Virus record (IMG/VR): IMGVR_UViG_3300031576_000001
Coordinates: 248,001 to 312,000 of that record
Reading direction: 5' to 3' (one strand)
Length of the DNA: 64,000 bases
The position numbers and the translations under genes were made by a program. The notes beneath the pieces are model-generated. The model was not told where the DNA came from. It was given only the letters and a program-made list of their open reading frames with translations, and made no database searches. Below, one piece after another: positions 1,637 through 64,000 of this stretch (the stretch's first letter is position 1; the number at the start of each line of letters is the position of its first letter).

Positions 1637-2479
1637 TAAGGGGTACTGGCTACGCTTCAGGTACCAGACCCACCTTGCGTCAAAGGGGCCAGACTGAGGG
1701 GGTACGACCACGGCGGGCTTTGCGGGTGGCTTGTTGCAAGCGCAGTCATTGTTCTGGTGGAGCCCAAAGAGCTTGACCTTGACGATGCCCACCGTGTACA
1801 GCGGTACCGTGAGGGCGAGCACACGCCCGACGTGCAAAGCTCCCATCACGTTTTGCGCGAGACCCATGGCTAAGCCATTAGCCTCTTTGCGGAGACTCCG
1901 CTCACTGGCGCCAAGGTAGGCGATCTGAGAGTGGTCCACCGTGCCAGCCTTGCCTGCCTCAAGGCTCGTTGCCCGAGGGACTACCCTCATGCTCACGTCC
2001 TGCCATCCAGACTCGCTGGCTCGCAGGTATCCCAGGTGACAGGAAGCGCAACCCGTGTCTTCGCTAGAGCGGGCGCTGTCCTGGGCACGTTCCTGCTTCC
2101 CCTCGTCGTAAGTAATACGCTCCAAAGCCGAGCTAAGCGCGGATTTGCTGGTTTCCGCCGCGATGCGTTGATTGCGCAAGGACGTGAGCCTGACCTTGGT
2201 GCCTTCAATACGAAGGTTACAGTCAGCGACGGCATTGCACTCGGTTTCCCAGTCCTTGGACAGCAACGTCACTACGCGCTCCCTCTCCGCAGCAACCCCC
2301 TTGTCATAGGCAACCCTCACGGAAGCCAGCACCCAAGAGAGAGCCTCCTCGTCGGTGTCAAAGGTGACCTTACTCTCCCCCTTGGTGGTGTCCACAAACC
2401 GATTGAAGGCGTCGGCAATTTGCGTGCGCCATTTGAGGCTGCACTCCTCGTAACCCGCTAGTTTGTCGTTGTCGCTCAT
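1637..2479 (-). CDS. Hypothetical protein (paralog of 2701..3243); ends at TTA 1639-1637
   Basis: Shares an F.xDEEAL.(W/Y)...ER motif with the neighbour; GAGG RBS and GGTGTA motif upstream; standard-code stop is at 1580. Confidence 0.6.
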
Positions 2480-2528
2480 GGTTCTGTCCTCACTTTACAC
2501 CAAAGAGGTTCTCTAGGGTAGTCTCAAA

Positions 2529-2679
2529 GAAAGAATCCCCGCGTGTGCGGGGAACACCGCCAGGCGTACCCCAAGGCTCACGTCGAGACCGGTACATCCC
2601 CGCGTGGGTGGGGAAAACTCACTCCTTGGGGCTCCTACGCGGTTTACCTCGGGTCGATCCCCGTTCACACGGGGAACAC
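2529..2679 (-). CRISPR. Mini CRISPR array with type I-E-like repeats (3 x 29 bp repeats, 2 x 32 bp spacers); no cas genes in the window
   Basis: + strand repeats: 2529-2557 GAAAGAATCCCCGCGTGTGCGGGGAACAC, 2590-2618 CGGTACATCCCCGCGTGGGTGGGGAAAAC, 2651-2679 GGGTCGATCCCCGTTCACACGGGGAACAC. Period is 61 bp. The reverse complement resembles the I-E repeat GTGTTCCCCGC..GCGGGGAT..ACCG. Confidence 0.9.
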
Positions 2680-2700
2680 TCTAAGTTGAAGGCGCAACCG

Positions 2701-3243
2701 TCAAGCAGGCTGGTCCTTACCAAACAGATCACTTTCCAAGAGGCTAGCCAGCATAGCAACCTCAGCGTCATTCCGTTCCGCCTGGACTTTCGAGTCTTTC
2801 AGCGTTGCACGGGCTTGCTTGGTGCGGGTTGCCAGCGTAGCGCTTCGGTCCTGAGCCTTGCCCCACTGAGAGGTAAGCTCGGAAAAGACACGCTCCAACA
2901 CCGCCCGCTCACCCTCTTTGCGTGCCTCGACGAGCCCACCCAAGGCGTGGTCCATGTAAGCAAGAGCCTCCTCGTCATTGGTGAAAACGACCGGGTTCTC
3001 TGTGTCATGCTTGGTAGCGAGGGCTGAGAGGCGGTCTCGCCAGTCCTGACTCGCACGATCATTGGCTCGCTTGGTTTGCTCGTCGGCATAGACAACGAGG
3101 GCGAGCAGGTGGGCTATCCAATCTAGCGCGGACTCGCGGGAGAGTAGAACGATGGGTGGTACCCCAAGCTGTTTGTTGCGTTGGTTGGCGAGGCTGGTGA
3201 TGCCCTCTAGCCAACGGTCGCGCTCGTCATCTGTCTGGCTCAT
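2701..3243 (-). CDS. Hypothetical coiled-coil protein (paralog of 1637..2479)
   Basis: VFTNDEEALAY motif; GGTGTA 10 nt upstream of ATG. Confidence 0.65.
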   Translation of the reverse strand: MSQTDDERDRWLEGITSLANQRNKQLGVPPIVLLSRESALDWIAHLLALVVYADEQTKRANDRASQDWRDRLSALATKHDTENPVVFTNDEEALAYMDHALGGLVEARKEGERAVLERVFSELTSQWGKAQDRSATLATRTKQARATLKDSKVQAERNDAEVAMLASLLESDLFGKDQPA

Positions 3244-3252
3244 AACCCCCGG

Positions 3253-3981
3253 TTACACCGATGGGGCTGCGATCTCGAAATGTTGCCAATCCTGGCGCCC
3301 AGCGAAGAACCCCCCGGAGTAGAAACCGTGCGCCTCAGCCAAGGGTACAAGGGGGTACACACAACCCCATGCTCCCAAAGGTGCCCCTTTTGACTTCAGC
3401 GGGTTCTCGCTGGCGTTTATGTCAAAGGCAGAGCCCCAACTATGTGAACTGAGGTTTACAGCGGACCCTCGGACGAAGCGGGGCACGTACAAGCCATCCC
3501 AGGACACAAGGAGGGACAGCAAGCCAGCCTGGCGCCACGCTTCAAAGAGGTCTACCAAGGGGCCGGCTACTTTACGGTGACACTGTACCTTGCCCGAGGA
3601 GGGTGCTCCCCGTACTCCCCCGATGGGCAAGAGCACGGTAACAAGGTTGTCCCGTGCCCAGGAGCCCTCGACCGTGATTGCCTCTGGGTTCCCTGGTAGC
3701 GGCGAGGCTCGGTAGGCAAACTGCCCCAAGAGGGCTACCTTGGCTGCGTAAGACAGGGGTTTCACGGTGGACACCGTAGGCGCTTCGGTCTCACGCAGCC
3801 CCTGGCTTTCGGCTTCCGCCAGCGTCTCGGCGTCCACCACCCCAGTAATCGCAAGCCCGTAAGTAGCCTGCCACTCGCGGAGCGCCTTGGTTATAGGCGC
3901 GGGCTCCGTCCTCTTAGCTAGAGAGGGCATGACGCCTACGCGGTTCAGAAAAGCCCCCATCTGGTACAGTGCTTCGTCCAT
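3253..3981 (-). CDS. M15-family peptidoglycan peptidase with N-terminal PG-binding domain
   Basis: ALREWQATYGLAITGVVD (PG-binding); SSHSWGSAFDIN and DWQHFE zinc-peptidase motifs. Confidence 0.85.
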   Translation of the reverse strand: MDEALYQMGAFLNRVGVMPSLAKRTEPAPITKALREWQATYGLAITGVVDAETLAEAESQGLRETEAPTVSTVKPLSYAAKVALLGQFAYRASPLPGNPEAITVEGSWARDNLVTVLLPIGGVRGAPSSGKVQCHRKVAGPLVDLFEAWRQAGLLSLLVSWDGLYVPRFVRGSAVNLSSHSWGSAFDINASENPLKSKGAPLGAWGCVYPLVPLAEAHGFYSGGFFAGRQDWQHFEIAAPSV

Positions 3982-4008
3982 GTAGGCGTGGGTAGCACAA
4001 GGGGCGCG

Positions 4009-4712: not shown

Positions 4713-4906
4713 CCCTCGTCACCCTGGCAGGCAACCCGACCCTCGCGACAGGCGAGGCGCTTCCAGGTGCGCCGCAGGCGGGCTTTCACGTTGCCGGCGC
4801 TGTAACCGCGCCCGCTGCCAACCTTGCCCACGCTGCTCTTCAGAGCACCAGCGCAGATGGCACCCACGTCCAGAGCGATCTCGATTTTGACGCCGTAGGG
4901 TTTCAT
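4709..4906 (-). CDS. Hypothetical protein
   Basis: GGAG RBS; GTGA overlap with the next gene. Confidence 0.5.
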   Translation of the reverse strand: MKPYGVKIEIALDVGAICAGALKSSVGKVGSGRGYSAGNVKARLRRTWKRLACREGRVACQGDEG

Positions 4907-4911
4907 GACTT

Positions 4912-5078: not shown

Positions 5079-5372
5079 TAAACCCAGGCTCCAACCGTGG
5101 TCCAGGGACCACCCAGCGACAGCGGCGAGGACCGCCTCATCGCTAGGACCACCGCGGTCCAAAACACCCTTTGTGTCCTGGTACAGAAACACCCCCACCT
5201 CTCCGAGGGGTACTGAATCCGCAGAGAAGTACAGGTCACTCTTCCTCGGGTCCGGGGACTCCGAGGTGTGCGTGACCCGCACCTCCCCGGACCCGTCCGG
5301 GGTAGCGTACACGTACACACAACCACGGTTCCGCTCGATGAACCGCCGCTTTGAAAAGAACCCGTAGGACAT
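5079..5372 (-). CDS. Hypothetical protein (TTA at 5081-5079; standard stop at 5049)
   Basis: Directly downstream of a GTGAAT-N16-CGTA promoter; true end ambiguous. Confidence 0.6.
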
Positions 5373-11477: not shown

Positions 11478-11795
11478 ATGATAAAAACCGGTAGCCCCCT
11501 CTTCAACGCTGTAACTCAAAGGCTCTCCCCCGAGGTTTGGGCTCGCAAGGTCGCCTGGCTCACTCAGGAAGAGATCACAGAGAGAGGACGCCTGGAGGGC
11601 GAAAGTTTGCTCGCCGCGGGGCGCCTCTTGCAAAGGGAAGAACGCCCCCTGGGCGAGTCCTCTTGGCACTTGAGCGGTACGCCCACCAACGTCACGGACC
11701 TTTGTGAGCGATTGGTTCAGTGGACCTGTCAACCCCTCCCCAGTTTGCGTACAGAATACGCTGTCAAGTCTGCCAGCGCCGAGGACTTGACGTTA
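11478..11795 (+). CDS. Hypothetical protein; ends at TTA 11793-11795
   Basis: TTA end removes the overlap with the convergent gene. Confidence 0.55.
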
Positions 11796-11836: not shown

Positions 11837-13042
11837 TAACCAGCTTGCGCGGGCCTTGACCTGAGCATCTAGCCCACTGTCCGCGATGAACTTCAAACAA
11901 GCAAGGTGCGCGGCATGGTCTGCCCAGTCGCTTGACTGTGGACCGATGGGGTAGGAGGGTTGCCAGTGCATCCTTAGCCGGTGCAAGCTCTCCGTGAAAG
12001 CAGCGAACTCTCCCATGACCCGGATGTGACGCTTCTTGAACCTGCCCTTGTCATGTAGAAGCGAGAGGTGCTTCCCCACGCCCACCTGAAACGGCAGCGT
12101 GCGGACAAGGATCTCGCCTACCGCTGTGTTGCCCGACGTGTAGCTGAAGATGTCAAAGAAATCCAAAGGCTGGGGGCGCTCTTTGAGCATCTTGAAGTGC
12201 TGCTCGACCTCGGCGGCGTAGGTTTGGGCTTGCTCGTCCCAGTCTTTCAGGTGCGAGAGGTTCACCATGATACGCCACACGTCCTCACGGATCATGGCAG
12301 ACTGAACCTGTAGCTTGCGTGACTTCCCTACGGGCGGTGTCGCGGCAGTGTCCTCTACGGTCGAGAAGACGCGCAGAACAGGGTGACCGTGGTTCTCTGC
12401 TTCGCCCGTGATGACACAGGGGTACCGCAGAGAGACCACCGGGGCGACACAAGCCAACTGTCGAGCAACCTCAGCTTGGTCATAAGAGACCCACCGGACC
12501 CGGCACTCGTTGGCGCCCGCGCGAGTCACGGCAAAGCCTGCCGCCTCACCCCCATTGTAAAGGGGGTACGTAGAGAGGAGTTTTTCGAGGCGGCGCCTTG
12601 TGACGACGCCGGGGGGGAGCTTATCTTTAGCGCCGGTAAGCTCCTGGGTGCGCTGGGCTAGCCTCTTGGCGGCACGCTCAAAGCCAGCGTCATGGACCCT
12701 TACGCGCCCTTCCCAGAGGGTTTCCATGAACTGCTCAAAGGTCCAGGTCTTCTTGGCGGGGGGGTCGTGGTACTTGTTTGGACCCCACCCCCTCTCAACC
12801 AGATCCAGCTTGAAGCCTTCAAGCCAGGTCTCGCAGACAATGGCATCCCCGGGGTGAATGTCCTCGATCCTCCCGTAACCGTTGTACTTTGCCTGGATAG
12901 GGGGGGTGCGAGGGAACCACAGCCCGTTAGCCTCACGGGGGCGTGCCCTGTAGGGGTTCTGGGTGAGAAGCAACACCATCACAGGGTCGCCTCCGTGGAT
13001 GGGGAGCCCGCTGGCGGCGCACGGCATGGAGAAAGATCCCAT
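11837..13042 (-). CDS. Hypothetical phage protein; ends at TTA 11839-11837
   Basis: Starts MGSFSMPCAASGLPI..GD, has YNGYG motif; GGTGTA 11 nt upstream. Confidence 0.7.
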
Positions 13043-13610: not shown

Positions 13611-14345
13611 TAAGACCGGCTGACGGAGAACACGGAGCACGCCTTGGTGTGAGATGAGCTTGGCTAGCTTAGGGTCTCTCAGCACGTCGTGAAGGTGCGT
13701 AGCCACGCCGTTGACCTCGCACCACAGGGAGACGAGGATTACGGTCTGACTGTAATCTGTATGCTTGCGCCCGTGGCGGAAGCCTCTTCCTTGGATGAGC
13801 CGTAGGTACTGCTTGGTTTTCGGGTCTTTGACCAGGGAGGCAATCGCCTCACCCTTCATTCCGAGGTAGCTCAGCCCCTCAAAGTGCCAGCCGTAGTTTA
13901 CAGCGTCCTCCGCAGAGCCTACTTTTAGCTCGTTGTCGATGAGCCAGTGCTTGCCCACGGTAGACACGATAGTGCCCAGAGGGAGGTCAGCGGGCAGCAA
14001 GGCGTCAATCTTGCGACTGTGCTCGATCATGGCCTCCGTGGACGAGGTTATGGCTCTGTTTCTGGGGGGGAGAGTGTAGCCCCGGTTGAGCCAGATAAGG
14101 TCTGCCAGCTTGGCGGTAAGCAGGGAGCACTCTAGCGCGTCGGCTATCCTCTGTTGCAGAGAGGCGCTGGCGTTGACCCGCACCCCGTTGACTTTCAGGG
14201 CGTCAGCGTAGACCCACACGGTAAGCTCGGTCCCTGTGTCCTTGTCTTGCACGTAGAGGGGGGCTAGGGTGGCTTCATACCTCCCGGCTCGTACCTCAGC
14301 CAGGATGTAATCCTCTCGTGCTTGCAGTGTACTTGGAAAACCCAT
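13611..14345 (-). CDS. Conserved-looking hypothetical protein; ends at TTA 13613-13611
   Basis: GKHW, NYGWH and HTDYSQ motifs; TTA end abuts the convergent gene instead of overlapping it. Confidence 0.65.
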
Positions 14346-16436: not shown

Positions 16437-16863
16437 GCCTCTCTTGGTACACCACCGAAGCCAGGGGAGAGGCTAAGTTGTAGTTCTTGGACTTGGAGTC
16501 GCTCTTGGGGGTCACCGTGACCCCCATCTTTTGGTGGTACGCCAGCGCCACGTCCGTAAAGTCGCGTTGGTTGTCTGGGTCTTGGTAACCCAAGAAACCA
16601 TCAAGGAAGTCTGCCGGTACCAGGGAGTCCTCAAAGGGGATCATCCCTACCAGGCTCTCTTGCCAGCCTGCCTTACTGCCCAGGTAGACCTCAATATGCG
16701 CCCAGAGGGCGACAGGGTAGTTGGCGATCCCTAGCTCCCCCTCGACCACGGCGGTGAGAACGGCAGACCACCCTCTTGGCGCTGGCACCGTGGTTATCGT
16801 GCGTACCTCCCCCAGGCTTACCTTCGGTGCCTTCGGGGGCTTGTCCTTCTTCTTTTTACCCAT
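16423..16863 (-). CDS. Hypothetical protein
   Basis: ATG overlaps the TTA of the upstream gene (TTATG). Confidence 0.6.
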   Translation of the reverse strand: MGKKKKDKPPKAPKVSLGEVRTITTVPAPRGWSAVLTAVVEGELGIANYPVALWAHIEVYLGSKAGWQESLVGMIPFEDSLVPADFLDGFLGYQDPDNQRDFTDVALAYHQKMGVTVTPKSDSKSKNYNLASPLASVVYQERHGSL

Positions 16864-17231
16864 AACGCCAGCTTTCCGCCGTGCTTGAAAGCTCTCTTGC
16901 GGTTGACCTCGTGCTTGAGCCGGACAGCCCTGTCCATATCCACCCCGAGGGTCTTGGCCGTGTCCAGCGTGCGAATGAGAATATCCGCTAGCTCCTCCTC
17001 GGCGTTGGTTAGCTCAGGGTTCTTGTCGCAAGGCTCGTACAGCTTGCCCTTGCGCACTACTTCCCAAAGCTCCGAGACCTCGCCGGTCAGGTTGGTCAGG
17101 AAAATGGCCATCCTTTCCACAGAAGGCTTCGTCTGCAAAGCACTCTCGTGGTGAAACCCGTGCTCAAGGGCATTCTGAAACACCACGTCCGCTACAGCGT
17201 TGAAATTCGTCGGGGGTAGGGGCTCACTCAT
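16863..17231 (-). CDS. MazG-like nucleotide pyrophosphohydrolase; ends at TTA 16865-16863
   Basis: GEVSELWE, EEELADILIR and K..VNRKR..KHGGK motifs. Confidence 0.8.
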
Positions 17232-18353: not shown

Positions 18354-18686
18354 TAACAAGGCGGGCAAATTAGCGTCGCGCTTTTCCGCTGTGACGAGGA
18401 GGGCGCAAGCAAGCACATGCTTGCACTTGTTACCCCTGCGAAAGTCCTCGCAGGTACAGGTGGACGTGTTGCCTGTGACCTTGACCACGTAGGTTTGTTT
18501 CTCGCTGGGAACATTATACACCCCGTTCCCCTGTGGCTCGATGTCGCCCGTGAAAGCCAGTGCTTTATTGAGTCGCTCTTTCCACTTGGGGTTCTTTGCA
18601 CCCCATGCGTCGGCTAGCGCCCTCATGGTCTGGTAGGTAGCGGCGGCTTGTTTACGGCGGACAATGCGGTCGTGTAGGTCAGACAT
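18354..18686 (-). CDS. SWIM zinc-finger protein; ends at TTA 18356-18354
   Basis: CTCEDF....CKH. Confidence 0.8.
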
Positions 18687-18707: not shown

Positions 18708-18911
18708 TAAGCGCATGTGTGTTGCGGTGTCACTCGCGCTTACCCCGTGCATCCCCCTGAACATCCGGGCTACCTCGTCGGCTAGCCTGACACCTTCCGC
18801 CAAGGGGCGGTTCATTTCCTCTACGCTCAACCTCTCGTAGTGGCACTGGTGAGGGTGCTCGGTAGGGCGTAGCTCTGGGGCTCTCTTAAAGGAGGGGGGC
18901 GGGGTCGGCAT
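18708..18911 (-). CDS. Small hypothetical protein; ends at TTA
   Basis: MPTPPPSF ORF. Confidence 0.4.
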
Positions 18912-22624: not shown

Positions 22625-23455
22625 ATGGCTAGTTACGAAAACCTAGCAGGTACAACCGAGACCACATTTCAAATTGGTCTGGACCGTCCACAAGTAAAGA
22701 GTACGTCCACAGGCGAGCTAGAAGCTAGAGACGCTACAGACTCGACTTACGCCAGGTTTCGCGTAGGCGCCCCTGTAGGTCCAAACGACGCGATTACCCG
22801 GTCCTATGCAGACACGCTGAGCAAGCCGATCATTGTTTCTGCTCAGTTTGACGGCAACAATGCGCTTCCTGCCAACACCGGAACCCCCAGCTACAAGGTA
22901 GTCACAACCACGGGTGCTTTTGCCAGCATTGGGGACGTGATCTACGATGACGGATCGGGAGTGGGCACTACCACGGTGCTTACGGCAATAGAGGGTCGTG
23001 TACTCGCTATTACGGACGCCCTCTCTGGTGGTACGGTCAGCCTTGACCCGGACAGCATTTACATCTGGGACGCTGACGGTTCTGCCTATGTAAAGATCGG
23101 GGACATTGGCTCCGTAACAGGGGCAAACAGGGTCATCCGATACACCATTACCAACGCTGCGACGCAGGACAGCGTGACTACGATTCCAGCAAGCGCGATT
23201 GTGGGACGCTGTGAGGTGAAGATAACGACCCCCTATTCCGGGGGAGCGTCTATCTCGGTGGGGCGAGCTGGTTCTCTGGCACTCATTATGCCCCCCACGG
23301 GGAACACCCCACAGGGGGCTAGCGGTAACATCTACCGTAGGTTCCAAGACACCGACTGGGGTGGCTCAGCTTTGGTGGTGCGGACTACGATCACAGGTGC
23401 TCCGGCTGCGGGTGCTGGCGTGATTATTGTCCACTACATGACACCCAACGCTTTA
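22625..23455 (+). CDS. Putative virion structural protein; ends at TTA 23453-23455
   Basis: NLAGT.E..FQIG N-terminus shared with the next gene. Confidence 0.6.
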
Positions 23456-27363: not shown

Positions 27364-28223
27364 AGGCTCTGGTTCTCTCCGGTGGTGGTAGTAAAGGCTC
27401 CTGGCAAGCGGGCGTATTGACTCGTCTCCTTGGCGAAGAGGGTCAGTACTACGAGGTAATCTGTGGTGTCAGCGTGGGAGCCCTCAACGGGGCCTTCCTG
27501 GCTCAGTACCCTCTGGGTAGAGAACGTGAGGCCAGCTTCGATCTTGGTAATCTCTGGCGTGCTGTAGAAACAAGCAAAATATACAAGCGCTGGTTCCCCT
27601 TTGGGCGACTACACGCCCTCTGGCGCGGTTCTGCTTACAACAGTGAACCCTTGGCGGATTGGGTGTCCACTGCACTCGACACCAAGAGAATCCAAACGTC
27701 CGGGCGTAAGCTCAGGGTGGGTGCAGTTTCCTTGACAACAGGGGAGTACCGCCTCTTTGGTGAGGACTACCCAGAGCTAACCCAAGCTGTTCTTGCGTCA
27801 GCTAGTTTTCCAGCCGCACTTTGCCCTGTATCGATGGAGGGTGAGCTTTGGTCCGATGGTGGGATCAAAGAGATTACCCCCCTGCAAGGAGCCATCGCTC
27901 TTGGTGCTTCGCACGTTGACGTGGTTTTGTGCTCCCCCAAGAGTACCACGACCCCCTTCCCTGCGGACGCTAACGCAATCAGCGTAGCTATGCGAACGAT
28001 TGACCTCATGAGCGATGAGATCCTCAACGACGACCTAGCTAAGACCGCCATGGTCAATCAGCTTGTCGAGGCGGGGGCGTGCAACGACAAGCGCCTGGTT
28101 ACCATACGGGTTTTCCGCCCTGAGAAGAACCTGATCGAGTCGAGCCTGGACTTCTCTAACGACAAGATGCGTGCCTTGCTTGACCAAGGGTACGCGGCAG
28201 CTTCTCGGTGGGAGAGCCTGTTA
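27360..28223 (+). CDS. Patatin-like phospholipase; ends at TTA 28221-28223
   Basis: LSGGGSKG, GVSVG (GxSxG), ASASFP and DGG motifs. Confidence 0.9.
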
Positions 28224-38425: not shown

Positions 38426-38685
38426 AAGACGCTGCGCTAGCTTTTCGTGAGGCTGCGCTAGCCTCCCTCCCACCGTGCCCCCTCTCAGCCAAGGACTCCT
38501 GTGGTCCTGTCACGCACTCCGTAGCGGAGGGCTACGGGGTTACCCTTTACTGTAGAGCGTGCGTTGCAACGCACGAGATAAAGGGCGCTGTAGAGCTACC
38601 GTGGGTTCAAGCTGAGTGCGACTTGCAGAGGGCGCTAACGAAGCAGACCGGTCTCGCCTCTTGGTTGAGGGACGCAGACGAATAA
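38410..38685 (+). CDS. Small Cys-containing hypothetical protein
   Basis: AAGGGGAG RBS. Confidence 0.5.
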   Translation: MPLSLKDAALAFREAALASLPPCPLSAKDSCGPVTHSVAEGYGVTLYCRACVATHEIKGAVELPWVQAECDLQRALTKQTGLASWLRDADE

Positions 38686-40295: not shown

Positions 40296-40784
40296 ATGTT
40301 CACACCCAATCCTCAACAAGCTGCATTTTTCTCTGACCCTGACTGTCACGCTAGCCTTCGGTGGTTGCATAACGAAGAGGTGAGTAACCGCGGGACAGGA
40401 CGCACCACGGCGTTGGCGCACCTCTACTTCCGGCAAGCCTTTCTCGCTCCCGGCGTCTCGGTCAAGGTCTATGACCACCACGACACAGAGAGGCACCACA
40501 AGGGCCTAGCAAGGTTTATCCTTGATTTCGTCAAGGGTAGAGACTTCGCGGGCTACTGGATAGCCGTTGACCTACACGCGCACACCCTCGCCGCACTAGT
40601 GTCCAGCGTGACGAAACCAATGACTGCACCTAGAGAGGCGACGACTTACATACACACGACTCCAGCGACGTACAGCTCCACAGGTGTAGTTACCGTAGGA
40701 GCAACGATAAGCTACGGGGCTACCCACACGTTTACAACCATCCCCGTGAGCACTAACTTCGTACCGTTCACAATTACGCATTTA
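40296..40784 (+). CDS. Hypothetical protein; ends at TTA 40782-40784
   Basis: RGTGRTT motif; appears fused to the radical SAM gene only under the standard code. Confidence 0.55.
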
Positions 40785-42720: not shown

Positions 42721-43995
42721 ATGCCATCGTGGTTTAGCGAGAACACGTCAGACAAGCAGCACTACAATCCAGGGCAAGTTTACTCCAACTTGCAGACCCT
42801 CTTTGAGAAGGACTGCCTGCGAAACGGTCGCACCTTCTCCGCTTGGGATCTGTCGGGTATACTCAGGGACGGAAGCTCCTTCGCTGCGTGGGAGAAGAAA
42901 ATAAAGTCCCTGGGTTTTGGCCGAGCTAGCTTTTACCGCTCGGACTGGGCTGAACTCACACCGGAACCGGAGAGCGAAACCGTGGTCACCGTGGTCTACC
43001 TCGGGGACCACGGGGTGGTGCAATACCAGGGTCCGCTGACCGGCACCCTTCGAGCCGTCAACGTGATCGCTAACGTGAGCGCTACCGTGAGCCAAGACAA
43101 GACGCGCGAAGAGATGCTCACGTTTCTCAGGGCTAACCTGCAAGAGCGACCTTCCAAAGAGACGGGGGCGCCCTTCCTGGCGACGACCGACTCACGCGGG
43201 GGGTTGACCTTCGAGCAAAACCTGACCAGCGTGGGCTCTCCCTGGGTACCCACTAACTACAGCAAAGAGGTTCGGGCAGCTTACAGCGCCATGCTACCTG
43301 CCTTCGCCTCTAAGAACCCCTCGGGCAAGCTGGTCATCCTCAACGGAGCGCCTGGCACTGGCAAGTCCTTCCTGCTTCAGGCATTGCTGTACGACACCCG
43401 GGATCGGTTTTGCCATATCATCATGCCGCCCTACATGATGCACAACATCACCGGACCCCAAACCATGTCCGCCCTGCTTCAGCACCGGAACGAAAACACG
43501 CGCAAGCGTACCGTCTTCTTCCTAGAGGACGCCGAGGACGCTCTCTTGGTACGTCAGGGCGATAACCACAGCGCGGTGAGCAACATCCTCAACCTGAGCG
43601 ACGGTATGATGGGGAAGATCCTCGACATACGGATCGTTGCCACCACCAACCGCAAGAAGGTTGAGCTAGACCCCGCCCTAATCCGTGATGAGCGCCTCTT
43701 GGCTCATATCTCCGTGGACCCCCTCTCCCCAGAGGAAGCCCGGGAAGCCTTTGATCACGTCTACCCAGAGAAGGCGGGTCAGTACACCCCGCACTACCCA
43801 ACCAGCCTGGCTACCGTCTACAAGACAGCCAAGTCAATGGGGTGGACAGCACCAGAGCCCGCCGATAAGCCCGCTTCTCGCGGTGTGGTGACCCAGCGCC
43901 AGATCGACCGAGACGAGGCTAAGGTCCGGGGACAATCCAAGGTAGGCGTTAGGGCACAACCGCGCAAACCCCACCTGGCAAGCGCCCCCAAGTTA
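42721..43995 (+). CDS. AAA+ ATPase; ends at TTA 43993-43995
   Basis: GAPGTGKS, FFLEDAE, LNLSDG, ATTN, DPALIR. Confidence 0.85.
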
Positions 43996-49934: not shown

Positions 49935-50050
49935 AACCAGCCCCTTACACCCTCCCCCCAAGAGAAAAGGCTGAGCCAAAAAAGCACCCTCCCTAACCTA
50001 CGCCTCACCTCAGCCCCAGCCCCCAGCCTAAAGGGTGTATACCCACACCC

Positions 50051-53834: not shown

Positions 53835-54461
53835 TAAGCGAACGATGCTCCGAGAGCGGGGTCTCGTGGGTGTGGTCAGGGTGTATTTGTCACCGCCGCC
53901 TGTGGGGGGGCGGGGTGCGTTAGTATTGGTAGCCCTGTTGATGAGCGCCTGTAGAGCCGCTGTCGAGAGCACGTTACTTTTGGAGACGGGGCTGAGTGTG
54001 GTAGGCGTAGCCTTGTATAGGTCGGGGTTATTGAGGAACCCGTGACCGTCGAGGTCGCCGTCGAGACCAAAGAGGAAGTTGAGTGCAGTCGCCGCGAGAG
54101 ATCCGCTACCCGTGAGGTTATTGCCGGTACCGAACGTGCTCACCAAATTCAGTGGGCTCGTTAGCGTACCGCTCCCTGTTGTGGACCCTGTGTAAGCTAG
54201 GGCAAGATTAAGCCCTGTACCGTTGGCGAAGAGGGTGCCTATACCCGTGGCCGCGCCATTTGCGACGGCGACTAGGTTTAGGTTGACCGCTGTAACTGTG
54301 CCCACGCCGGTCGTATTGCCTATGTAGGCGAGGGCAAGGTTAAGGGGGGCTGACAGAGAACCAGCGCCCGTGGTGCTACCGGCGTAGGTAAGGTCTAGGT
54401 TCAAGAAAGCAGAGAGGTCACCATTACCATCTAGATTACCGTCAAGAAGTTGGTCAGCCAT
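53835..54461 (-). CDS. Gly/Thr-rich repeat virion protein; ends at TTA 53837-53835
   Basis: Repeated L.L.Y.G.TTG.G.L motif. Confidence 0.6.
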
Positions 54462-54963: not shown

Positions 54964-55359
54964 TAAGGTTTCCGAGGCGGTCAAGCTACTTGTCAAGAAT
55001 TTGGCTACGTCACCGGAGAGCACGGTGCGGGGTGTGCCCAGCGAGGCGTAGTACAGAAGGTCTCCAGCTACAGCGGCGTTGTACACACCGAAGCCGTTCA
55101 CGGTGCCCCAGTTGGCGGTTGCGGCGGGGAACGTCACGTCGGACACCGACGCAGAGCTTCCGGAGACGGGAGTGCCAAAGGTTGTGGACACGTCAACGCG
55201 AGCGTAGCTCCCACCAGAGACCTCGACACCACCCACGCCGCCAGCGCCCGGTGTGGTGGTAAAGAGTGCCATATGCACGCTGGTGGGCTGGGTGATTACG
55301 GAGCCTGGGATGAGCCAGAACTTGAGGGTATCGTTATCGGTAGCGTAGCTCTTGGGCAT
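54964..55359 (-). CDS. Phage minor tail/structural protein; ends at TTA 54966-54964
   Basis: ALFT..P....EVSGGSYAR...VTFPAATANWGTV..G.LLY signature. Confidence 0.75.
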
Positions 55360-56040: not shown

Positions 56041-56295
56041 ATGGCCAGTACCGACAAGGAACCCCTCTCCGTGATGCAGTAAGCCCACCTCCAACGGATC
56101 AAAGGGAGGCGTCTCTCGGAGCGCACCCGACACGGCAAGCAAGAGCGTAGTTTGCTCACCCGCAAGATGATCACGGTCGAGGGGGCGCTAGCCTCTGGGG
56201 TAAAGCTGACCCCTCTTGGTGAAGAGGCATTGCGTGAGCGTGAGGCTATCGAGGCGGGTAAGCTCCGGGTCCAGGGCACCACGTACCGTTACTTA
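56041..56295 (+). pseudogene. Winged-helix-like ORF interrupted by TAA 56080; ends at TTA 56293
   Basis: GGTGTA-N11-ATG; reading frame continues to LTPLGEEAL. Confidence 0.4.
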
Positions 56296-57199: not shown

Positions 57200-57585
57200 T
57201 TGTTCTCGACGATGCTGAGCCTGCGGTATTGGGTGAGCCTGTCCAGGCTTACAGGAATCTCTCTGTGCGAGAGGGGCGGCTCTACTCGGTACGGCTCAGG
57301 GGACGGTTAATCGCCAGGGTACAAGACCTTTGGTTGTACGATGTTACTTTTCGTGTGCGACCTGGGGGTCGCAGGCGTGCTTTGCGAGAGGGTGTGCGCA
57401 ACGTACACGCCTTTGTCTCTGGCACAGCGGTCTCTCTCATGCCTAGAGGGCTACTGTGGCAGAGAGCCAGCTACAACCCCTTTCTCACTGACCGGGCTGG
57501 CTTTTTTCTGGTGGAGTCGGGTCAGGAGGTGTCTGCGGCACGCTATGCGCGTTTGGACCAGGAGGGGTGCTTTGTGGTGCTGTAG
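57196..57585 (+). CDS. Phage hypothetical protein (NVHAFV motif); carries an internal TTA at 57307
   Basis: YRNL, YSV, RNVHAFV and YNPF motifs. Confidence 0.6.
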   Translation: MIVLDDAEPAVLGEPVQAYRNLSVREGRLYSVRLRGRLIARVQDLWLYDVTFRVRPGGRRRALREGVRNVHAFVSGTAVSLMPRGLLWQRASYNPFLTDRAGFFLVESGQEVSAARYARLDQEGCFVVL

Positions 57586-57943
57586 CTTTGCGCTTGTGGG
57601 TGGGGCAGTTTGGGTGATAGTGCCCCACCTGTCCGCAGCTACGGCACTCTTTCTTGCGGGCAGAGCCACCAGCTAGCAACGTGTTGACAGCTTCTTCGCT
57701 CCACAGGGAAGTCACCTTACGCCTAGAGTCAGCGTTGAACAACTTGAGGTAGGCAACGACCAGCTTAACCGTGTCAAGCCAGTAAGGGTCTTCTGCCCTC
57801 AAAGCCCGCACAGCGTCGTCAATCTCGCCCAGGGGGAGCGTCGTCCAGGCTTCGGTGGCTATAGGCTGGTTGTAACGACTGAGGAGGAGGATCGCGGTAA
57901 GCCGCTCAGAGAGGGTGGGAGGGGTGGTACTCGTGTTGGGCAT
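57485..57943 (-). CDS. Hypothetical protein with CCHC zinc knuckle
   Basis: CRSCGQVGHYHPNCP. Confidence 0.5.
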   Translation of the reverse strand: MPNTSTTPPTLSERLTAILLLSRYNQPIATEAWTTLPLGEIDDAVRALRAEDPYWLDTVKLVVAYLKLFNADSRRKVTSLWSEEAVNTLLAGGSARKKECRSCGQVGHYHPNCPTHKRKATAPQSTPPGPNAHSVPQTPPDPTPPEKSQPGQ

Positions 57944-58233
57944 GGGGCTAGGCGTAGGTGTCTAAGCTCCTTGACACGGCTGTCAAAGACCAGAGCCGTC
58001 AACTGGTTACCCAGGTCGGGCTCGCAGAAGTTAGCGGTCGCCTTGGGGAGCAGCGCGTAGAGCGCCCCTTCGTTGTCCACCTAGAGGAAGACCAGCGTGT
58101 TGCCACCCTCGTACCAAAGGCGAGCTTTCTCCGGGTTACGCATGACAAACTCTACCAGGGCGTGCATCCCCTGGACAGCCTGAGCGCCAGGGGAGAGGTC
58201 GCTACGTGTCACGATGTAAAGTTTCTGTGTCAT
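57898..58233 (-). CDS. Peptidyl-tRNA hydrolase, Pth2-like, with in-frame TAG at codon 51 (58083-58081); not in the ORF track as a whole
   Basis: MTQKLYIVTRSDLSPGAQAVQGMHA...W..GGNTLVFL*VDNEGAL...FCEPDLGNQLTAL; first downstream TTA at 57900-57898. Confidence 0.75.
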
Positions 58234-59663: not shown

Positions 59664-59804
59664 GGTAACAATCTCTCGTGTTTGGGTGCCTGGCGGAAGG
59701 GGTACACCGAGAGAGCCACGGGGAGGACCACGCTTGCGGGGGAGCTAGAAGAAGGCTTTCATGGTGAGCGTAGGGTAACCAGGGTTAGAGGTTGGTACAA
59801 GGGG

Positions 59805-59877
59805 TGCGCCCTGCGGGAGTTGAACCCGCGCAAAAGAACTTTAGAGGCTCTGTACTCTACCTTTGAGTTAAAGGCGC
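59805..59877 (-). tRNA. tRNA with CUA anticodon (amber suppressor type)
   Basis: GCGCCTT-TA-ACTC AAAGGTA GAGT-AC-AGAGC CTCTAAA GTTCT-TTTGC-GCGGG TTCAACT CCCGC-AGGGCGC-A. All four stems pair; loop is CU-CUA-AA; no encoded CCA. Confidence 0.8.
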
Positions 59878-60414: not shown

Positions 60415-61329
60415 TAAGCTGTCGGCAAGCGTAAGCAGTTGGTGGTTCAAGGCGATCAAGGCGTCGCGGTCTTCTAGAGGCTCCAAGAGGGTGCTGTCTA
60501 CGCCCTCCAAGCCGTAGAACGCCCCGAGGAGAGCCCCGACCATGCTAGCAATGGTGTCAGTATCACCCCCTCTACGGATGGCTAGCTCGATACCCTCCTT
60601 AAAGGAGGTAGCTACCGCGGCCAGCGCAAAGACAACCGCCACGTCTGCTGTGACCCCTCTAGGTGGGAGAGCCTTGAGGTACCCCGCCAGGGAGTGCCTG
60701 GGCAAGGGCTGAGGGAAGTTCTCAAAAATGTCGTGTAGTTTCCCGGCTGGCAGCATGGTAGCCACCTTCTTAGCCAGGTAGGTAGGTGTGGTTACCTGTA
60801 GGGCTAGTAGACCCACCCCAAGAGCGATAGCCATGCTGCCGTGCCTTGCCTCGGGGGACTGGTGGGTCAACGAAGCGTCCACGTCGGCGTATCGCGCGGC
60901 TAGGTCCAGGTCATGCCGGAAAGCCAGCCCGATGGGCGATACCCTCATGGCGGTACCGTTGCCCTGTGAGCCAGCGACCCCACAGGTTGTCGGGCTCTTG
61001 GTGCGTAGGTACTTCAAGATAGCCTCACGCACGGTGTTCCCCATCCCCCTGCACGAACCGGACTGAAACCACTTGTAGTAGCTCTCCATGACGGCGCTGG
61101 GGTTGAACGTCTTCTCTTGGACGAGGGACTTGGCAAGCGCCACGGTCATCTGGGTGTCGTCCGTGACCTGACCTGGCTCAATCATGAGCCAATTGTTGCG
61201 CGTGGGTAGGTAGGAGTGCCCATCCCAGTCAAGCAAGAGGGGGCTGAGGCTCATCCTCCCCTCGAAAGGTGCGCCCAGTGCGTCCCCTACGGCAACCCCG
61301 ACGAGCGGGGCAGGCGTGCGGTCTTTCAC
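60415..61329 (-). CDS. ADP-ribosylglycohydrolase (ARH/DraG family); ends at TTA 60417-60415
   Basis: GDALGAP.E, TDDT, GNG.AMR..P, TH and GGDTDT. Confidence 0.92.
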
Positions 61330-62352: not shown

Positions 62353-62519
62353 AGTCTGTACCCCCCGTGTCTGCCCGCGAGCAAGAGCTTATCGAGGCGT
62401 TGACCCAGATCACGCAAGACCTGGAGGAAGAGGTAGCGGAATGTGTTACGCTAGCCAAGAGACGTAGTGGTCAGTGGCCCGCCCCTCCCAAGCGTGAACG
62501 TCGTGACACCCTCCCTTGA
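62349..62519 (+). CDS. Small hypothetical protein
   Basis: GTGA coupling. Confidence 0.4.
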   Translation: MKSVPPVSAREQELIEALTQITQDLEEEVAECVTLAKRRSGQWPAPPKRERRDTLP

Positions 62520-62940
62520 CGTGTCCGTGATACTGCCCCCCTTTCTCTGGCAAGGGGGTTGCCCACCCCCAGGGGACACGTTGGCACGCCAGGGTTGGAA
62601 GTCTCTGGTTCTCTGCGCGGAGGAATGGACCAATGCCGGGCTGTACCAGGACATCGAGGTACTCTGCGCGCCTAACCAGGACAACGGGCTTCTCACTCAG
62701 AAACAATGGGAACGTGCTCGGTCAGCGGCGCGCTGGGTAGCCAGGCGTATCGAGCAAAACCAGAAGGTACTGGTGACGTGCATGGCAGGGCTAAACCGCT
62801 CTGGGCTAGTCACGGCGCTGGTTCTGCATGAGCGTATGGGCTGGTGCGGCGCTCGTTGTGTGAGTCACGTAAAGCAGGCGCGCGATGAGTTTGCCTTGAC
62901 CAACCCTGCCTTTGTCAACGCCCTTCTTAGCTTGAAGTGA
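62467..62940 (+). CDS. Dual-specificity/protein-tyrosine phosphatase family (start uncertain)
   Basis: VLVTCMAGLNRSG (CX5R) and N..F. Confidence 0.85.
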   Translation: MVSGPPLPSVNVVTPSLDVSVILPPFLWQGGCPPPGDTLARQGWKSLVLCAEEWTNAGLYQDIEVLCAPNQDNGLLTQKQWERARSAARWVARRIEQNQKVLVTCMAGLNRSGLVTALVLHERMGWCGARCVSHVKQARDEFALTNPAFVNALLSLK

Positions 62941-63005
62941 GGTCGGGCACTGACCCGGCTACTCCGTTCAGCTTGGGGGGGCGAGCCACGGGTTTAGTAA
63001 GAGAC

Positions 63006-63431
63006 TCAGCTTGGGGTCAGCCCACCCGAAGAGGGTGGGGTGGACGCTGGGGGCGGGGCAGGGGGAGGGGGAGCTTGCGGTGTGACCTTACGGATGGTGA
63101 GGGTAGCAAAGTCAAGCTGCCACTGACCTGAGCCGTTCACCAAGTCGATCCCCTTGGCTGTCATCATTTCCCTGGTTTTCTGGGTAAATGCCTCTTCGTG
63201 TTGGCGGTAGAGGGTGGCGTACCGGTCTACCTTGTCTTCTGCGATCTTGAGGGCGCCCTTGTAAGCTGCGGATTCGAGGGCAGCCGTAGCTAGCCCGTCC
63301 CGTGTGGCGGTGAGGATGCTAACTTGCTGACGTACCGCTACCTTCTCCTCTTCCGTGAGGTTGTACTCAAGCTGGGGCAGGACGTTAGAAGGGTCTGAGG
63401 CTTCCGTCTGAGGCTTCCGGTGTTTTGCCAT
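63006..63431 (-). CDS. Hypothetical coiled-coil protein
   Basis: 141 aa ORF. Confidence 0.55.
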   Translation of the reverse strand: MAKHRKPQTEASDPSNVLPQLEYNLTEEEKVAVRQQVSILTATRDGLATAALESAAYKGALKIAEDKVDRYATLYRQHEEAFTQKTREMMTAKGIDLVNGSGQWQLDFATLTIRKVTPQAPPPPAPPPASTPPSSGGLTPS

Positions 63432-63470
63432 GGTGCCGCGACAAGTTAGCCTGAGACGCCATGGAAAGCA

Positions 63471-63516
63471 ACAACCCCTGGTAGCCCTCGCTGAGAGGCA
63501 CCCTACCAGGGGTTGT
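63471..63516 (-). terminator. Hairpin terminator
   Basis: ACAACCCCTGGTAG...CTACCAGGGGTTGT 14 bp stem. Confidence 0.65.
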
Positions 63517-63536
63517 GGTCAGGAGTCAGCTAAGGC

Positions 63537-64000
63537 TAAGGTGAGGAGAACGGCGTCACCGATCTGGATGAGCACCTTGACCAAGCCGGCACCACCTCGG
63601 GTAACTATGCCCACCTTGAGGACATAGTTTGTGGCGGTCGTGGGCGCCGTGAGTGTCCAGAAGCCAGCGGAGACACCCGTTCCGGTCGCTGAGAGGAACG
63701 CGCGTTGACCCACGTTAGCGTCCGTAGGTACGCTGTCCCACACTGCGTCAGGCACAGAGACTTCACCGGCAACGATGACCGAGATGCTAGCGTTTGCGGC
63801 GGCGATGGCGGCAGCAACACCGATTACGTTGGCGTCAAGTTCGCTGGTTGTGTTGGCGTCAGCGTGGAAGATACGGTTGTCGTTAGCTCCGTCATCCTTG
63901 ACACAGACCAGCTTGAAAGCCCCCAGTGCGTAGGTGCCGTTGACGGTCCCCGTCATGGTGACGGCGTTGGCACCTACCCCGCTGTGAGTGTGCAGAGCGT
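63537..64000 (-). CDS. Virion (head fibre/decoration-like) protein, probably 5'-truncated by the window edge; ends at TTA 63539-63537
   Basis: ADA...VIGVA...G.V...GQR.FLS...G..T.TAPT...V..VG.V pattern. Confidence 0.6.

What the first reader, a model, noticed from the sequence alone, without database searches (positions are those of the whole stretch)
1637..63539. TTA (UUA) behaves as a fourth stop codon: candidate sense-to-stop recoding
Seen: I found no in-frame TTA in the three longest ORFs (1268, 1296 and 867 aa) or inside the conserved enzyme cores, although CTA, TTG, CTT, ATA and GTA are used freely, so GC bias alone does not explain it. About 20 ORFs have their first TTA close to the 3' end: 1637-, 11793+, 11837-, 13611-, 16863-, 18354-, 18708-, 23453+, 28221+, 28260-, 31732+, 37723+, 38683-, 40782+, 43993+, 53835-, 54964-, 56293+, 57898-, 60415-, 63537-. 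After it the frame reads like filler that runs into terminators, promoters or convergent genes. TAA, TAG and TGA are also still used as stops. Known: UUA is a stop in the Thraustochytrium mitochondrial code (table 23), and TTA is regulatory in Streptomyces (bldA). I know of no bacterial or phage UUA stop. Inference: a phage- or host-encoded release factor reads UUA, or UUA is an empty codon resolved by drop-off or rescue.
Basis: partly seen in the sequence, partly recalled or inferred. Interest (0 to 1): 0.96.

Follow-up and report, generated by a model that had tools for sequence, protein, structure and literature searches.

The report
TTA works as a stop codon
In this 322-kb phage and at least four relatives, the leucine codon TTA sits where genes end and is almost absent inside genes, so it acts as a fourth stop codon, which has not been reported outside mitochondria.

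Summary

- **Position:** All 21 listed sites are in-frame TTAs. Of 31 in-frame TTAs in the window, 20 lie in the last 40 codons of their ORF (15% expected, p=7e-10). No other codon behaves this way.
- **Coding signal:** It stops at the TTA. GC at codon positions 1/2/3 is .61/.47/.74 before and .63/.60/.60 after.
- **Relatives:** Orthologues end exactly at the TTA position with TGA, TAA, TAG or TTA. In one virion protein, 23 of 28 aligned homologues stop after "PNA". The other five continue with one Leu, shown to be TTA in all five, then an unconserved tail.
- **False fusions:** Standard-code ORFs join unrelated proteins across a lone TTA. Examples are a small protein joined to a radical SAM enzyme and ThyX joined to a CxxCxxCC protein.
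- **Re-annotation:** With four stops, 23 of 79 window genes end in TTA, and convergent overlaps shrink or disappear.
- **Distribution:** The trait marks a small clade of five independent assemblies (51-59% GC). Sister phages use TTA as ordinary leucine.
- **Exception:** One gp82-like gene has a TTA inside its conserved domain.

The mechanism is unresolved: either release-factor recognition or an empty codon cleared by rescue. No release factor or tRNA-Leu was found in the ~175 kb sampled.

The parts
1637..1639 (-). TTA ending ORF 1637-1867 (76 aa), followed by an 18-codon non-coding tail to TAA at 1580
   Evidence: coding score 51.4 before, -0.7 after
1871..1873 (-). TTA ending ORF 1871-2479 (202 aa). 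The next ORF starts two codons later at an ATG in the same frame
5079..5081 (-). TTA ending ORF 5079-5396 (105 aa). The 9-codon tail holds AAGGAGG and the ATG of the next gene
11793..11795 (+). TTA ending ORF 11478-11795 (105 aa). Removes the 136-nt convergent overlap with the next gene
11837..11839 (-). TTA ending ORF 11837-13114 (425 aa), followed by a 35-codon tail with a hairpin
13611..13613 (-). TTA ending ORF 13611-14447 (278 aa). The orthologue in L206 also ends in TTA within 4 residues. The former tail is covered by a + strand gene, 13393-13605
16474..16476 (-). TTA ending ORF 16474-16863 (129 aa). The tail holds an inverted repeat, a Shine-Dalgarno-like GAGAGG and the ATG of the next gene
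16863..16865 (-). TTA ending the MazG-like gene 16863-17291 (142 aa). It overlaps the next ATG as TT[A]TG. The L002 orthologue ends with the same six residues (HGGKLA), then TAG
18354..18356 (-). TTA ending the SWIM-domain gene 18354-18686 (110 aa)
23453..23455 (+). TTA ending the virion structural protein gene 22625-23455 (276 aa). 23 of 28 aligned homologues stop here after ...PNA. Four relatives also carry TTA here
28221..28223 (+). TTA ending the patatin-like gene 27342-28223 (293 aa). The orthologue in JBBAQX ends at the aligned position with TGA
28260..28262 (-). TTA ending ORF 28260-29120 (286 aa). Same triplet as the next canonical stop (TAA) of the convergent patatin frame
31732..31734 (+). 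TTA ending ORF 31072-31734 (220 aa)
37723..37725 (+). TTA ending ORF 37288-37725 (145 aa). Removes the 35-nt overlap with the next gene
38683..38685 (-). TTA ending ORF 38683-39486 (267 aa). Same triplet as the TAA stop of the convergent gene 38410-38685
40782..40784 (+). TTA ending the small gene 40296-40784 (162 aa). It is the only thing separating that gene, in frame, from the radical SAM gene that starts at ATG 40815
43993..43995 (+). TTA ending the AAA ATPase gene 42706-43995 (429 aa). Same triplet as the TAA stop of the minus-strand gene 43993-44310. The orthologue in JBBAQX (417 aa) also ends in TTA
49994..49996 (-). TTA ending ORF 49994-50317 (107 aa)
53835..53837 (-). TTA ending ORF 53835-54461 (208 aa), followed by a 23-codon tail
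54964..54966 (-). TTA ending the Gp80 fibre-like gene. The Pfam domain ends 3 residues before it. A second TTA at 55423-55425 lies upstream of the real ATG (about 55323)
56293..56295 (+). TTA ending the short ORF 56152-56295 (47 aa)
58217..58219 (-). TTA ending the short ORF 58217-58444
60415..60417 (-). TTA ending the ADP-ribosylglycohydrolase gene 60415-61329 (304 aa)
63537..63539 (-). TTA ending a 1190-aa gene that begins beyond the right edge of the window. A second TTA follows two codons later
18708..18710 (-). Gene status uncertain
   Evidence: coding score 7.6
57898..57900 (-). Gene status uncertain
   Evidence: coding score 8.6
57307..57309 (+). The exception: TTA at codon 38 of the gp82-like gene 57196-57585, inside the conserved domain and aligned to Val in the Geobacillus phage GBK1 homologue
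59803..59877 (-). tRNA with anticodon CUA (amber-suppressor type). It is the only tRNA in 103 kb of this contig. Any link to the TTA stops is unknown

Best explanation
Shown: in this huge phage (322-kb contig Ga0247727_10000022 / IMGVR_UViG_3300031576_000001) and a small clade of relatives, protein-coding regions end at in-frame TTA in about a quarter of genes. TTA is otherwise excluded from reading frames. So TTA is a functional fourth termination codon alongside TGA, TAA and TAG. I put about 0.9 on this functional claim.

Inferred: in the infected cell no tRNA reads UUA efficiently. A release activity then frees the finished protein, most likely a class-I release-factor-type protein with widened codon recognition, encoded by the phage or the host. 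The host is possibly an actinobacterium of the Microbacteriaceae.

A plausible origin is codon capture. TTA became vanishingly rare in a GC-rich setting, lost its decoder, and reappeared only where termination is harmless or useful, namely at gene ends. The confidence below is for the whole statement, including the release-factor step.
For: Position: 20 of 31 in-frame TTAs fall in the last 40 codons (p=7e-10) and no other codon does this. Over 103 kb the figure is 30 of 49 (p=6e-13), with about 151 TTAs expected in coding sequence.

Coding signal: it ends at the TTA. The 275 codons after it score -0.055 per codon with GC1/2/3 of .625/.60/.604. Equal stretches before it score +0.198 with .607/.465/.738. 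The last codons of genes without a tail TTA score 0.100 +/- 0.038, and none of 2000 resamples is as low as the tails. The same holds in relative JB, the sampled 39 kb of JBBAQX010000001.1.

Orthologous ends coincide exactly:
- MazG-like: HGGKLA then TTA here, HGGKLA then TAG in L002.
- GFN then TGA here, DFN then TTA in JBBAQX.
- HVET then TGA here, DTET then TTA in JBBAQX.
- Patatin: WESL then TTA here, GYKL then TGA in JBBAQX.
- Virion protein: 23 of 28 aligned homologues stop after PNA. The 5 that continue do so with Leu plus an unconserved tail. That Leu is TTA in all five assemblies.

Across genomes, 43 ortholog pairs have a query ending in TTA. In 65% both C-termini lie within 3 aa of the alignment end, against 46% for canonical-stop controls. 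Only 10 of 43 would do so if TTA were read through. The partner stops are TTA 14, TGA 9, TAA 4 and TAG 1.

False fusions resolved:
- The listed homologues of the radical SAM enzyme cover only its C-terminal ~69%, and the seven aligned begin at or next to Met174 of the 562-aa ORF.
- Homologues of its first 162 aa are nearly all free-standing proteins of 93-154 aa, and none carries the radical SAM part.
- ThyX and a CxxCxxCC protein are separated only by TTA followed directly by GTG.
- In another same-frame pair the TTA is followed by a hairpin, GGAGG and ATG.

Re-annotation with four stops: the total coding score rises in clade genomes (4935 to 5080, 2111 to 2171, 791 to 833, 678 to 692). It falls in standard-code relatives (841 to 629, 1313 to 1091, 896 to 782). 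Convergent overlaps shrink or disappear.

Independence: the JGI and ENA assemblies are identical over 16.8 kb, and four further assemblies from other samples show the trait.

For a release-factor-type mechanism rather than rescue: a conserved virion structural protein ends in TTA in five genomes. TTA also exchanges freely with canonical stops. Both imply efficient termination that does not destroy the protein.
Against: - The gp82-like gene (57196-57585) is intact in the standard code. Its TTA at codon 38 lies inside the Pfam domain and aligns to Val. So TTA may be readable in some context or at some time, or the gene may be a recent arrival or dead.
- No release-factor gene was found. No GGQHVNxT-coding DNA occurs in the IMG/VR copy of the contig. 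No GGQ protein with release-factor context occurs in about 175 kb from four clade genomes.
- The host, its tRNA-Leu(UAA) and its release factors could not be examined.
- In L206 my own gene call gives a weak tail enrichment (p=0.13), although the database gene calls give p=0.004.
- Sister phages that are 60-68% identical in the virion protein read TTA as leucine, so the change must be fairly recent.
- There is no protein-level evidence at all.
Confidence: 0.6

Rival explanations
1. UUA is an empty (unassigned) codon rather than a recognised stop. The infected cell has no tRNA-Leu(UAA), either because the host lacks it or because it is destroyed on infection. Ribosomes stall at UUA at the end of the ORF. 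The finished protein is freed by a codon-independent route, such as an ArfB/ICT1-type factor, ArfA with RF2, or peptidyl-tRNA drop-off followed by Pth.
For: It fits the same sequence facts: TTA is purged from ORFs and tolerated at their ends. No release-factor gene was found in about 175 kb of clade sequence. The possible host is an actinobacterium, a group in which TTA is the rarest codon and, from my own knowledge, depends on a single tRNA. Unassigned codons are documented, for example CGG in Mycoplasma capricolum, cited in PMC8629427. The window carries RNA ligase and 2H phosphoesterase genes of the kind used in conflicts over tRNA damage.
Against: From general knowledge, rescue systems are low-capacity back-ups and tmRNA marks the product for degradation. 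Yet 26% of genes end in TTA, including a conserved virion structural protein in five genomes. There is no sign of nearby in-frame back-up stops: the distance to the next canonical stop after TTA (median 18 codons) matches that after TGA.
Confidence: 0.25
2. A hungry-codon frameshift, as proposed for human mitochondrial AGA/AGG. The ribosome pauses on TTA and slips +1, so that TAG or TAA in the +1 frame (TTAG, TTAA) is read by an ordinary release factor.
For: G follows the TTA in 32 of 63 putative TTA stops in four genomes, and A in 4. So 57% have an immediate +1 TAG or TAA. TTAG makes up only about 25% of all TTAN tetranucleotides in the contig.
Against: 27 of 63 TTA stops are followed by C or T. 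In the two longest contigs, the next +1-frame stop after such sites is 2-89 codons away, which is a random spread. The codon before TTA shows no slippery pattern. The preference for G at +4 is shared by TAA stops (11 of 23).
Confidence: 0.05
3. The standard code applies. TTA is a very rare leucine codon, perhaps regulatory as with bldA in Streptomyces, and the tails and fusions are really translated.
For: The gp82-like gene carries a TTA at a conserved aliphatic position in an otherwise intact ORF. Sister phages use TTA as leucine.
Against: The tails have non-coding composition and no conservation, even between genomes 80% identical in the adjoining protein. Homologues stop exactly at the TTA. 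The standard code would fuse unrelated proteins in at least five places. No other rare codon clusters at 3' ends.
Confidence: 0.04
4. An artefact of sequencing, assembly or base modification has turned real TAA or TGA stops into TTA.
For: TTA differs from TAA and TGA by one base. Huge phages often carry modified DNA.
Against: An error process cannot know the reading frame, yet TTA is common out of frame (678 occurrences on both strands) and nearly absent in frame. TAA and TGA stops persist in the same sequence contexts. Two assemblies of this contig agree. Four other assemblies from different samples and pipelines show the trait, with TTA at the same orthologous stop.
Confidence: 0.02

Closest known systems
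Thraustochytrium aureum mitochondrial code (NCBI table 23)
   Same: The same codon changes in the same direction: UUA is a termination codon in addition to the standard stops (cited in PMC10752896).
   Different: That case is an organelle genome with its own reduced translation system. Here it is a clade of 200-320-kb phages of bacteria that must use, or modify, a host ribosome, host release factors and host tRNAs. The two are certainly independent in origin.
Phage stop-codon recoding (TAG to Gln, code 15; TGA to Trp, code 4) in crAss-like, Lak and other phages
   Same: A lineage-specific departure from the standard code in phages, with close standard-code relatives. Public gene calls are wrong as a result. 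A suppressor-type tRNA is present in the genome.
   Different: The direction is opposite. Those phages turn a stop into a sense codon, and Borges et al. saw only TAG to Gln and TGA to Trp. Here a sense codon becomes a stop, which a tRNA alone cannot achieve. In-frame TAG and TGA were looked for here and not found.
Vertebrate mitochondrial AGA/AGG 'stops' (table 2)
   Same: Sense codons without a decoder mark the ends of ORFs. From my own knowledge, the proposed solutions are a frameshift onto UAG or a codon-independent release factor (ICT1).
   Different: In human mitochondria only two genes are involved. Here about 26% of genes are, and 43% of the sites have no stop in the shifted frame.
bldA-dependent TTA codons of Streptomyces
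   Same: A possibly actinobacterial setting, with TTA as the rarest codon and dependent on one tRNA.
   Different: In Streptomyces TTA is translated as leucine inside genes and serves developmental regulation. Here it lies at gene ends and the frame after it is not coding.
Unassigned codons (CGG in Mycoplasma capricolum; AGA/AUA in Micrococcus luteus)
   Same: A codon driven out of use under base-composition pressure, with loss of its decoder. This is the state expected just before codon capture (PMC8629427).
   Different: Those codons are simply absent. Here the codon has come back in large numbers at one kind of position, the end of the ORF.

Membership tests
Genetic code with UUA as a termination codon (table 23-like, four stops) | In-frame TTA is absent from conserved coding positions | tested here: met
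   There is no TTA in the three longest ORFs. About 151 are expected in 103 kb. All ten that are neither in the first 20 nor the last 45 codons of an ORF, except one, lie at gene ends, upstream of true starts or between fused genes. The exception is the gp82-like gene, codon 38.
Genetic code with UUA as a termination codon (table 23-like, four stops) | TTA aligns with the C-termini or stop codons of homologues | tested here: met
   Ten distinct TTA-ended proteins have a partner whose C-terminus matches within 3 aa, and 23 of 28 aligned homologues of the virion protein stop at the TTA position.
Genetic code with UUA as a termination codon (table 23-like, four stops) | The coding signal (codon usage, GC periodicity, conservation) ends at TTA | tested here: met
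   The structure model also has pLDDT below 50 for residues 276-279, which are the last residue before the TTA, the TTA-coded Leu and the two tail residues.
Genetic code with UUA as a termination codon (table 23-like, four stops) | No tRNA decodes UUA in the translating system | not testable with these tools
   No tRNA-Leu was found in 103 + 39 + 20 + 13 kb of clade sequence. About 219 kb of this contig and the whole host genome were not seen.
Genetic code with UUA as a termination codon (table 23-like, four stops) | Peptide release occurs at UUA (release-factor specificity, or C-terminal peptides) | not testable with these tools
   This needs proteomics, ribosome profiling or in-vitro release assays. 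No release-factor gene was found. One search was inconclusive.
Phage stop-to-sense recoding (code 15 / code 4) | In-frame TAG or TGA inside conserved genes, with coding continuing after them | tested here: not met
   The frame after TAG stops scores -0.131 per codon. The long open stretches after TGA or TAA with positive score are the next genes, which happen to be in the same frame.
Phage stop-to-sense recoding (code 15 / code 4) | A phage-encoded suppressor tRNA | tested here: met
   tRNA with anticodon CUA at 59803-59877(-), Rfam tRNA 55.5 bits. Its presence alone does not make the phage recoded.
bldA-type regulatory TTA | TTA is translated as leucine within functional ORFs | tested here: not met
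   Only one candidate exists, the gp82-like gene. All others mark ORF ends.
Hungry-codon frameshift termination (mitochondrial AGA/AGG type) | A canonical stop lies in the shifted frame at every site | tested here: not met
   36 of 63 sites have TAG or TAA at +1. The 27 sites followed by C or T do not, and for the 18 of these in the two longest contigs the next +1 stop is 2-89 codons away.

The most novel reading that the evidence does not exclude
A clade of huge phages, and perhaps their actinobacterial host, uses a true four-stop genetic code in which UUA is recognised by a release factor of altered specificity. This would be the first sense-to-stop codon reassignment known outside organelles. 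It would also belong to a class of code change that current code-prediction screens cannot detect.
Probability: 0.55. Interest if true: 0.96.

Novelty: new variant of a known kind. Interest (0 to 1): 0.9.

Why it matters
- **Known code changes run the other way.** In bacteria and phages, known changes either give a stop codon a sense meaning or swap one sense meaning for another. A sense codon becoming a stop needs a change in termination itself: release-factor recognition, or a productive way to end translation without one. This would give a system in which the evolution of stop-codon recognition can be tested.
- **Existing screens would miss it.** Codetta does not model termination and was not run on viruses (PMC8629427). 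More such codes may therefore be hidden in metagenomes.
- **Public annotation of these phages is wrong.** About a quarter of the predicted proteins carry false tails or are false fusions. One example is the 562-aa protein that is really a 162-aa protein followed by a separate radical SAM enzyme.
- **It looks like a live example of codon capture.** Sister lineages still read TTA as leucine.
- **It could be of practical use.** A natural factor that terminates at UUA, or a host that leaves UUA empty, would be useful for engineered genetic codes and for biological containment.

Tried and rejected
**Hypotheses tested and rejected**
- GC bias or general avoidance of AT-rich codons. No other A/T-rich codon is tail-enriched, and most controls of similar GC have 2.5-4 TTA per 1000 codons, evenly spread.
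- Promoter or terminator signals overlapping gene ends as the source of TTA. This does not explain the in-frame specificity or the exact matches to orthologous stops. A terminator scan of 1-20000 was uninformative.
- TAG recoding linked to the tRNA(CUA). There is no in-frame TAG with coding continuation.
- Avoidance of A after the TTA. TTAA is rare everywhere in the contig.
- +1 frameshifting as a general mechanism.

**Searches that led nowhere**
- Megablast of 25 kb against the phage records: no match.
- Loci related to the 1296-aa protein: only the contig itself.
- The metagenome scan with the helicase: only distant or very short relatives.
- Release-factor search: the GGQHVNxT DNA pattern is absent from this contig. 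Walking the contig left and right found no release factor and no tRNA other than CUA.
- Close homologues of the gp82-like gene: none.
- blastn of the tRNA against the phage records: none.
- PDB sequence search with the virion-protein profile: nothing meaningful.

**Limits of this work**
- All gene calls are from my own simple codon-score caller, not a standard gene finder.

Full report
**What the window is.** The 64-kb window (59.4% GC) is positions 248001-312000 of a 322,633-bp contig. The contig is held as IMGVR_UViG_3300031576_000001 and Ga0247727_10000022. Its genes are phage-like: a Gp80 fibre protein, an L5 gp82-like protein, a SNF2-type helicase, tail-fibre-like proteins and peptidoglycan-binding peptidases. 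It also carries many accessory enzymes: patatin, MazG, NUDIX, ADP-ribosylglycohydrolase, a radical SAM enzyme, RNA ligase and a 2H phosphoesterase. It has no near relative among deposited phage genomes. Distant protein matches are to jumbo phages.

**Checking the observation.**
- I called genes with a simple codon-score method, which gave 74 ORFs and 91.5% coding.
- There are 31 in-frame TTAs among 2067 leucine codons and none in the three longest ORFs.
- Twenty of the 31 lie in the last 40 codons of their ORF, where 15% of all codons lie (p=6.7e-10). Five more lie in the first 16 codons.
- No other codon shows this. AGA is next at p=0.006.
- TTA is 8% of TTR codons, while A-ending codons are 22-44% of every other NNR pair.
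- I extended the contig to 103 kb by walking. This gives 49 in-frame TTAs, 30 in the last 40 codons (p=6e-13), against about 151 expected from position-specific base frequencies.
- Among 73 other phage loci of 24-68% GC, only pieces of this contig and one relative show the effect.

**Does coding stop at the TTA?** Yes.
- The 275 codons between a tail TTA and the next canonical stop have flat GC at the three codon positions (.625/.60/.604) and a coding score of -0.055 per codon.
- Equal stretches just before the TTA have .607/.465/.738 and +0.198.
- The last codons of genes without a tail TTA average 0.100 +/- 0.038, and none of 2000 resamples fell as low as the tails.
- The tails contain what intergenic DNA contains: Shine-Dalgarno sequences and the start codon of the next gene, hairpins, and a TT[A]TG stop-start overlap.
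- Calling genes with four stops gives 79 genes, 23 of them ending in TTA. The summed coding score rises from 3065 to 3220 while the coding fraction falls.
- Convergent overlaps of 18, 50 and 101 nt disappear, and one of 51 nt shrinks to the shared stop triplet. Several co-directional overlaps also go.

**Comparative evidence.** Several relatives carry the same trait.
- One is JBBAQX010000001.1 (205 kb, 58.9% GC), deposited as contig 1 of a MAG named Lysinibacter sp. EUL_204. In its database gene calls, 7 of 7 in-frame TTAs are within the last 33 codons.
- Stops coincide to the residue between the two phages and with a more distant relative:
  - HGGKLA then TTA here, HGGKLA then TAG in L002.
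  - GFN then TGA here, DFN then TTA in JBBAQX.
  - HVET then TGA here, DTET then TTA in JBBAQX.
  - WESL then TTA here, GYKL then TGA in JBBAQX.
  - PNA then TTA in both.
- The PNA protein has more than 200 homologues. Of 28 aligned, 23 end at PNA or its equivalent. The five that go on all do so with a single Leu followed by unrelated tails of 1-15 residues.
- That Leu is TTA in the window, in JBBAQX, in Logan contigs from ERR7850080 (56% GC) and DRR198489 (51.5% GC), and in a JGI contig from sample 3300008055.
- The protein is a virion structural protein by fold. The model has pLDDT 81.6, and the best matches are a siphophage baseplate-tail protein and capsid cement proteins. Confidence falls below 50 for residues 276-279, which are the last residue before the TTA and the tail.
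- Across genomes, 43 ortholog pairs have a query ending in TTA. In 65% both C-termini are within 3 residues of the alignment end, against 46% for canonical-stop controls. Only 10 of 43 would be if TTA were read through. The partners end in TTA (14), TGA (9), TAA (4) and TAG (1).

**False fusions.** The standard code joins unrelated proteins across a lone TTA.
- The 562-aa ORF 40296-41984 is really two genes. The listed radical SAM homologues are mostly 360-460 aa and cover only its C-terminal ~69%. The seven I aligned begin at or next to its Met174.
- Homologues of its first 162 residues are nearly all free-standing proteins of 93-154 aa, and none carries the radical SAM part.
- Elsewhere on the contig a ThyX-like protein and a CxxCxxCC protein are separated only by TTA followed directly by GTG.
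- Another same-frame pair is separated by TTA, a hairpin, GGAGG and ATG.
- The 'internal' TTAs of JBBAQX resolve in the same way.

**Limits of the clade.**
- Relatives only slightly more distant read TTA as leucine. These are L208 (SRR14932698, 52% GC, 8 TTA per 1000 codons, spread evenly), L209, L012 and L003.
- In those relatives a four-stop call lowers the coding score. In the four clade genomes it raises it.
- The trait is therefore derived and fairly recent.

**Against.**
- The gp82-like gene (57196-57585) is intact under the standard code. It matches the full Pfam domain and has a TTA at codon 38 aligned to Val in a Geobacillus phage homologue. It has low GC3 and no close relatives.
- That gene may be a recent arrival, a dead gene, or a sign that TTA can be read in some context or at some stage of infection.
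- There is no protein-level evidence.
- All gene calls are from my own simple method.

**Artefact?** Unlikely.
- TTA is common out of frame, with 678 occurrences on the two strands.
- TAA and TGA stops persist in the same sequence contexts.
- A separate ENA assembly is identical over 16.8 kb.
- Four other assemblies from other samples share the trait.

**Mechanism.** What is shown is that ORFs end at TTA. How the ribosome lets go is inference.
- I favour recognition by a release-factor-type protein. TTA ends about 26% of genes, including a conserved structural protein in five genomes, and swaps freely with canonical stops in evolution. Both imply efficient release that does not destroy the protein.
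- The main rival is an empty codon cleared by codon-independent rescue.
- A +1 slip onto TAG or TAA fits 57% of sites but not the rest.
- I found no release-factor gene, no GGQ protein with release-factor context, and no tRNA other than one with anticodon CUA in about 175 kb of clade sequence. Most of this contig and the whole host genome were out of reach.
- The possible host is an actinobacterium. This rests on the binning of JBBAQX with a Microbacteriaceae MAG and on the mycobacteriophage-type gp82 gene. It is weak evidence.

**Comparison with what is known.**
- UUA is a stop in the Thraustochytrium mitochondrial code.
- Phage recoding described so far is stop-to-sense only.
- The large code screens cannot detect new stops and did not cover viruses. 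A 2026 screen of bacteria and archaea does not mention UUA.
- Searches for a UUA or TTA stop in phages or bacteria found nothing.
- I therefore rate this a new variant of a known kind of phenomenon (variant genetic codes), of high interest, with the mechanism open.

Noticed in passing
window 59803-59877 (-): A tRNA with anticodon CUA (amber-suppressor type). ARAGORN labels it tRNA-Pyl only because of the anticodon. It is the only tRNA in 103 kb of the contig. TAG still behaves as a stop in the window, and the tRNA has no blastn match in the phage records.
   Followed up: partly
L084 and L085 (IMGVR_UViG_3300024252_000004, IMGVR_UViG_3300024258_001044), whole loci: Apparently unrelated phages of 45% GC (only a weak match over part of the radical SAM query) with only 0.7-0.9 in-frame TTA per 1000 codons, although the TTA trinucleotide is common out of frame. 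Some of the few TTAs are internal. This may be a second case of TTA avoidance or an early stage of the same process.
   Followed up: partly
window 43993-43995 and 38683-38685: Convergent genes share a single triplet as the stop on both strands (TTA on one strand, TAA on the other). This is possible only if both TTA and its reverse complement TAA terminate.
   Followed up: partly
window 50713-51807 (-), 15368-15928 (+), 17528-18331 (-): An RNA ligase, a 2H/LigT phosphoesterase (also a weak Acb1 match) and a metallophosphatase. This set resembles phage tRNA-repair or anti-defence toolkits. It could bear on a conflict over tRNA but was not analysed.
   Followed up: no
all TTA stops in the four clade genomes (63 sites): The base after the TTA is G in 32 of 63 sites, so TTAG is over-represented compared with its share of all TTAN (about 25%). 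TAA stops show a similar preference for G.
   Followed up: partly
L202 6087-6302 (-) and 6250-6882 (-): Two adjacent, overlapping gene calls in the JBBAQX contig both match the R2K_2/R2K_3 families. This suggests a frameshifted or split gene.
   Followed up: no
L205 1-1471 (contig 218472-219942): A DNA N6/N4 methyltransferase gene with an intein-splicing domain inside it.
   Followed up: no
window 13393-13605 (+): A 70-aa + strand gene that becomes visible only when the minus-strand ORF 13494-14447 is ended at its TTA. It explains why that one tail had a positive coding score.
   Followed up: partly
L091 vs L092, last ~110 bases of L092: The ENA assembly of the same phage (322,662 bp) differs from the JGI contig only at its very end. 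This is consistent with a different cut point or a terminal overlap of a circular or terminally redundant genome.
   Followed up: no
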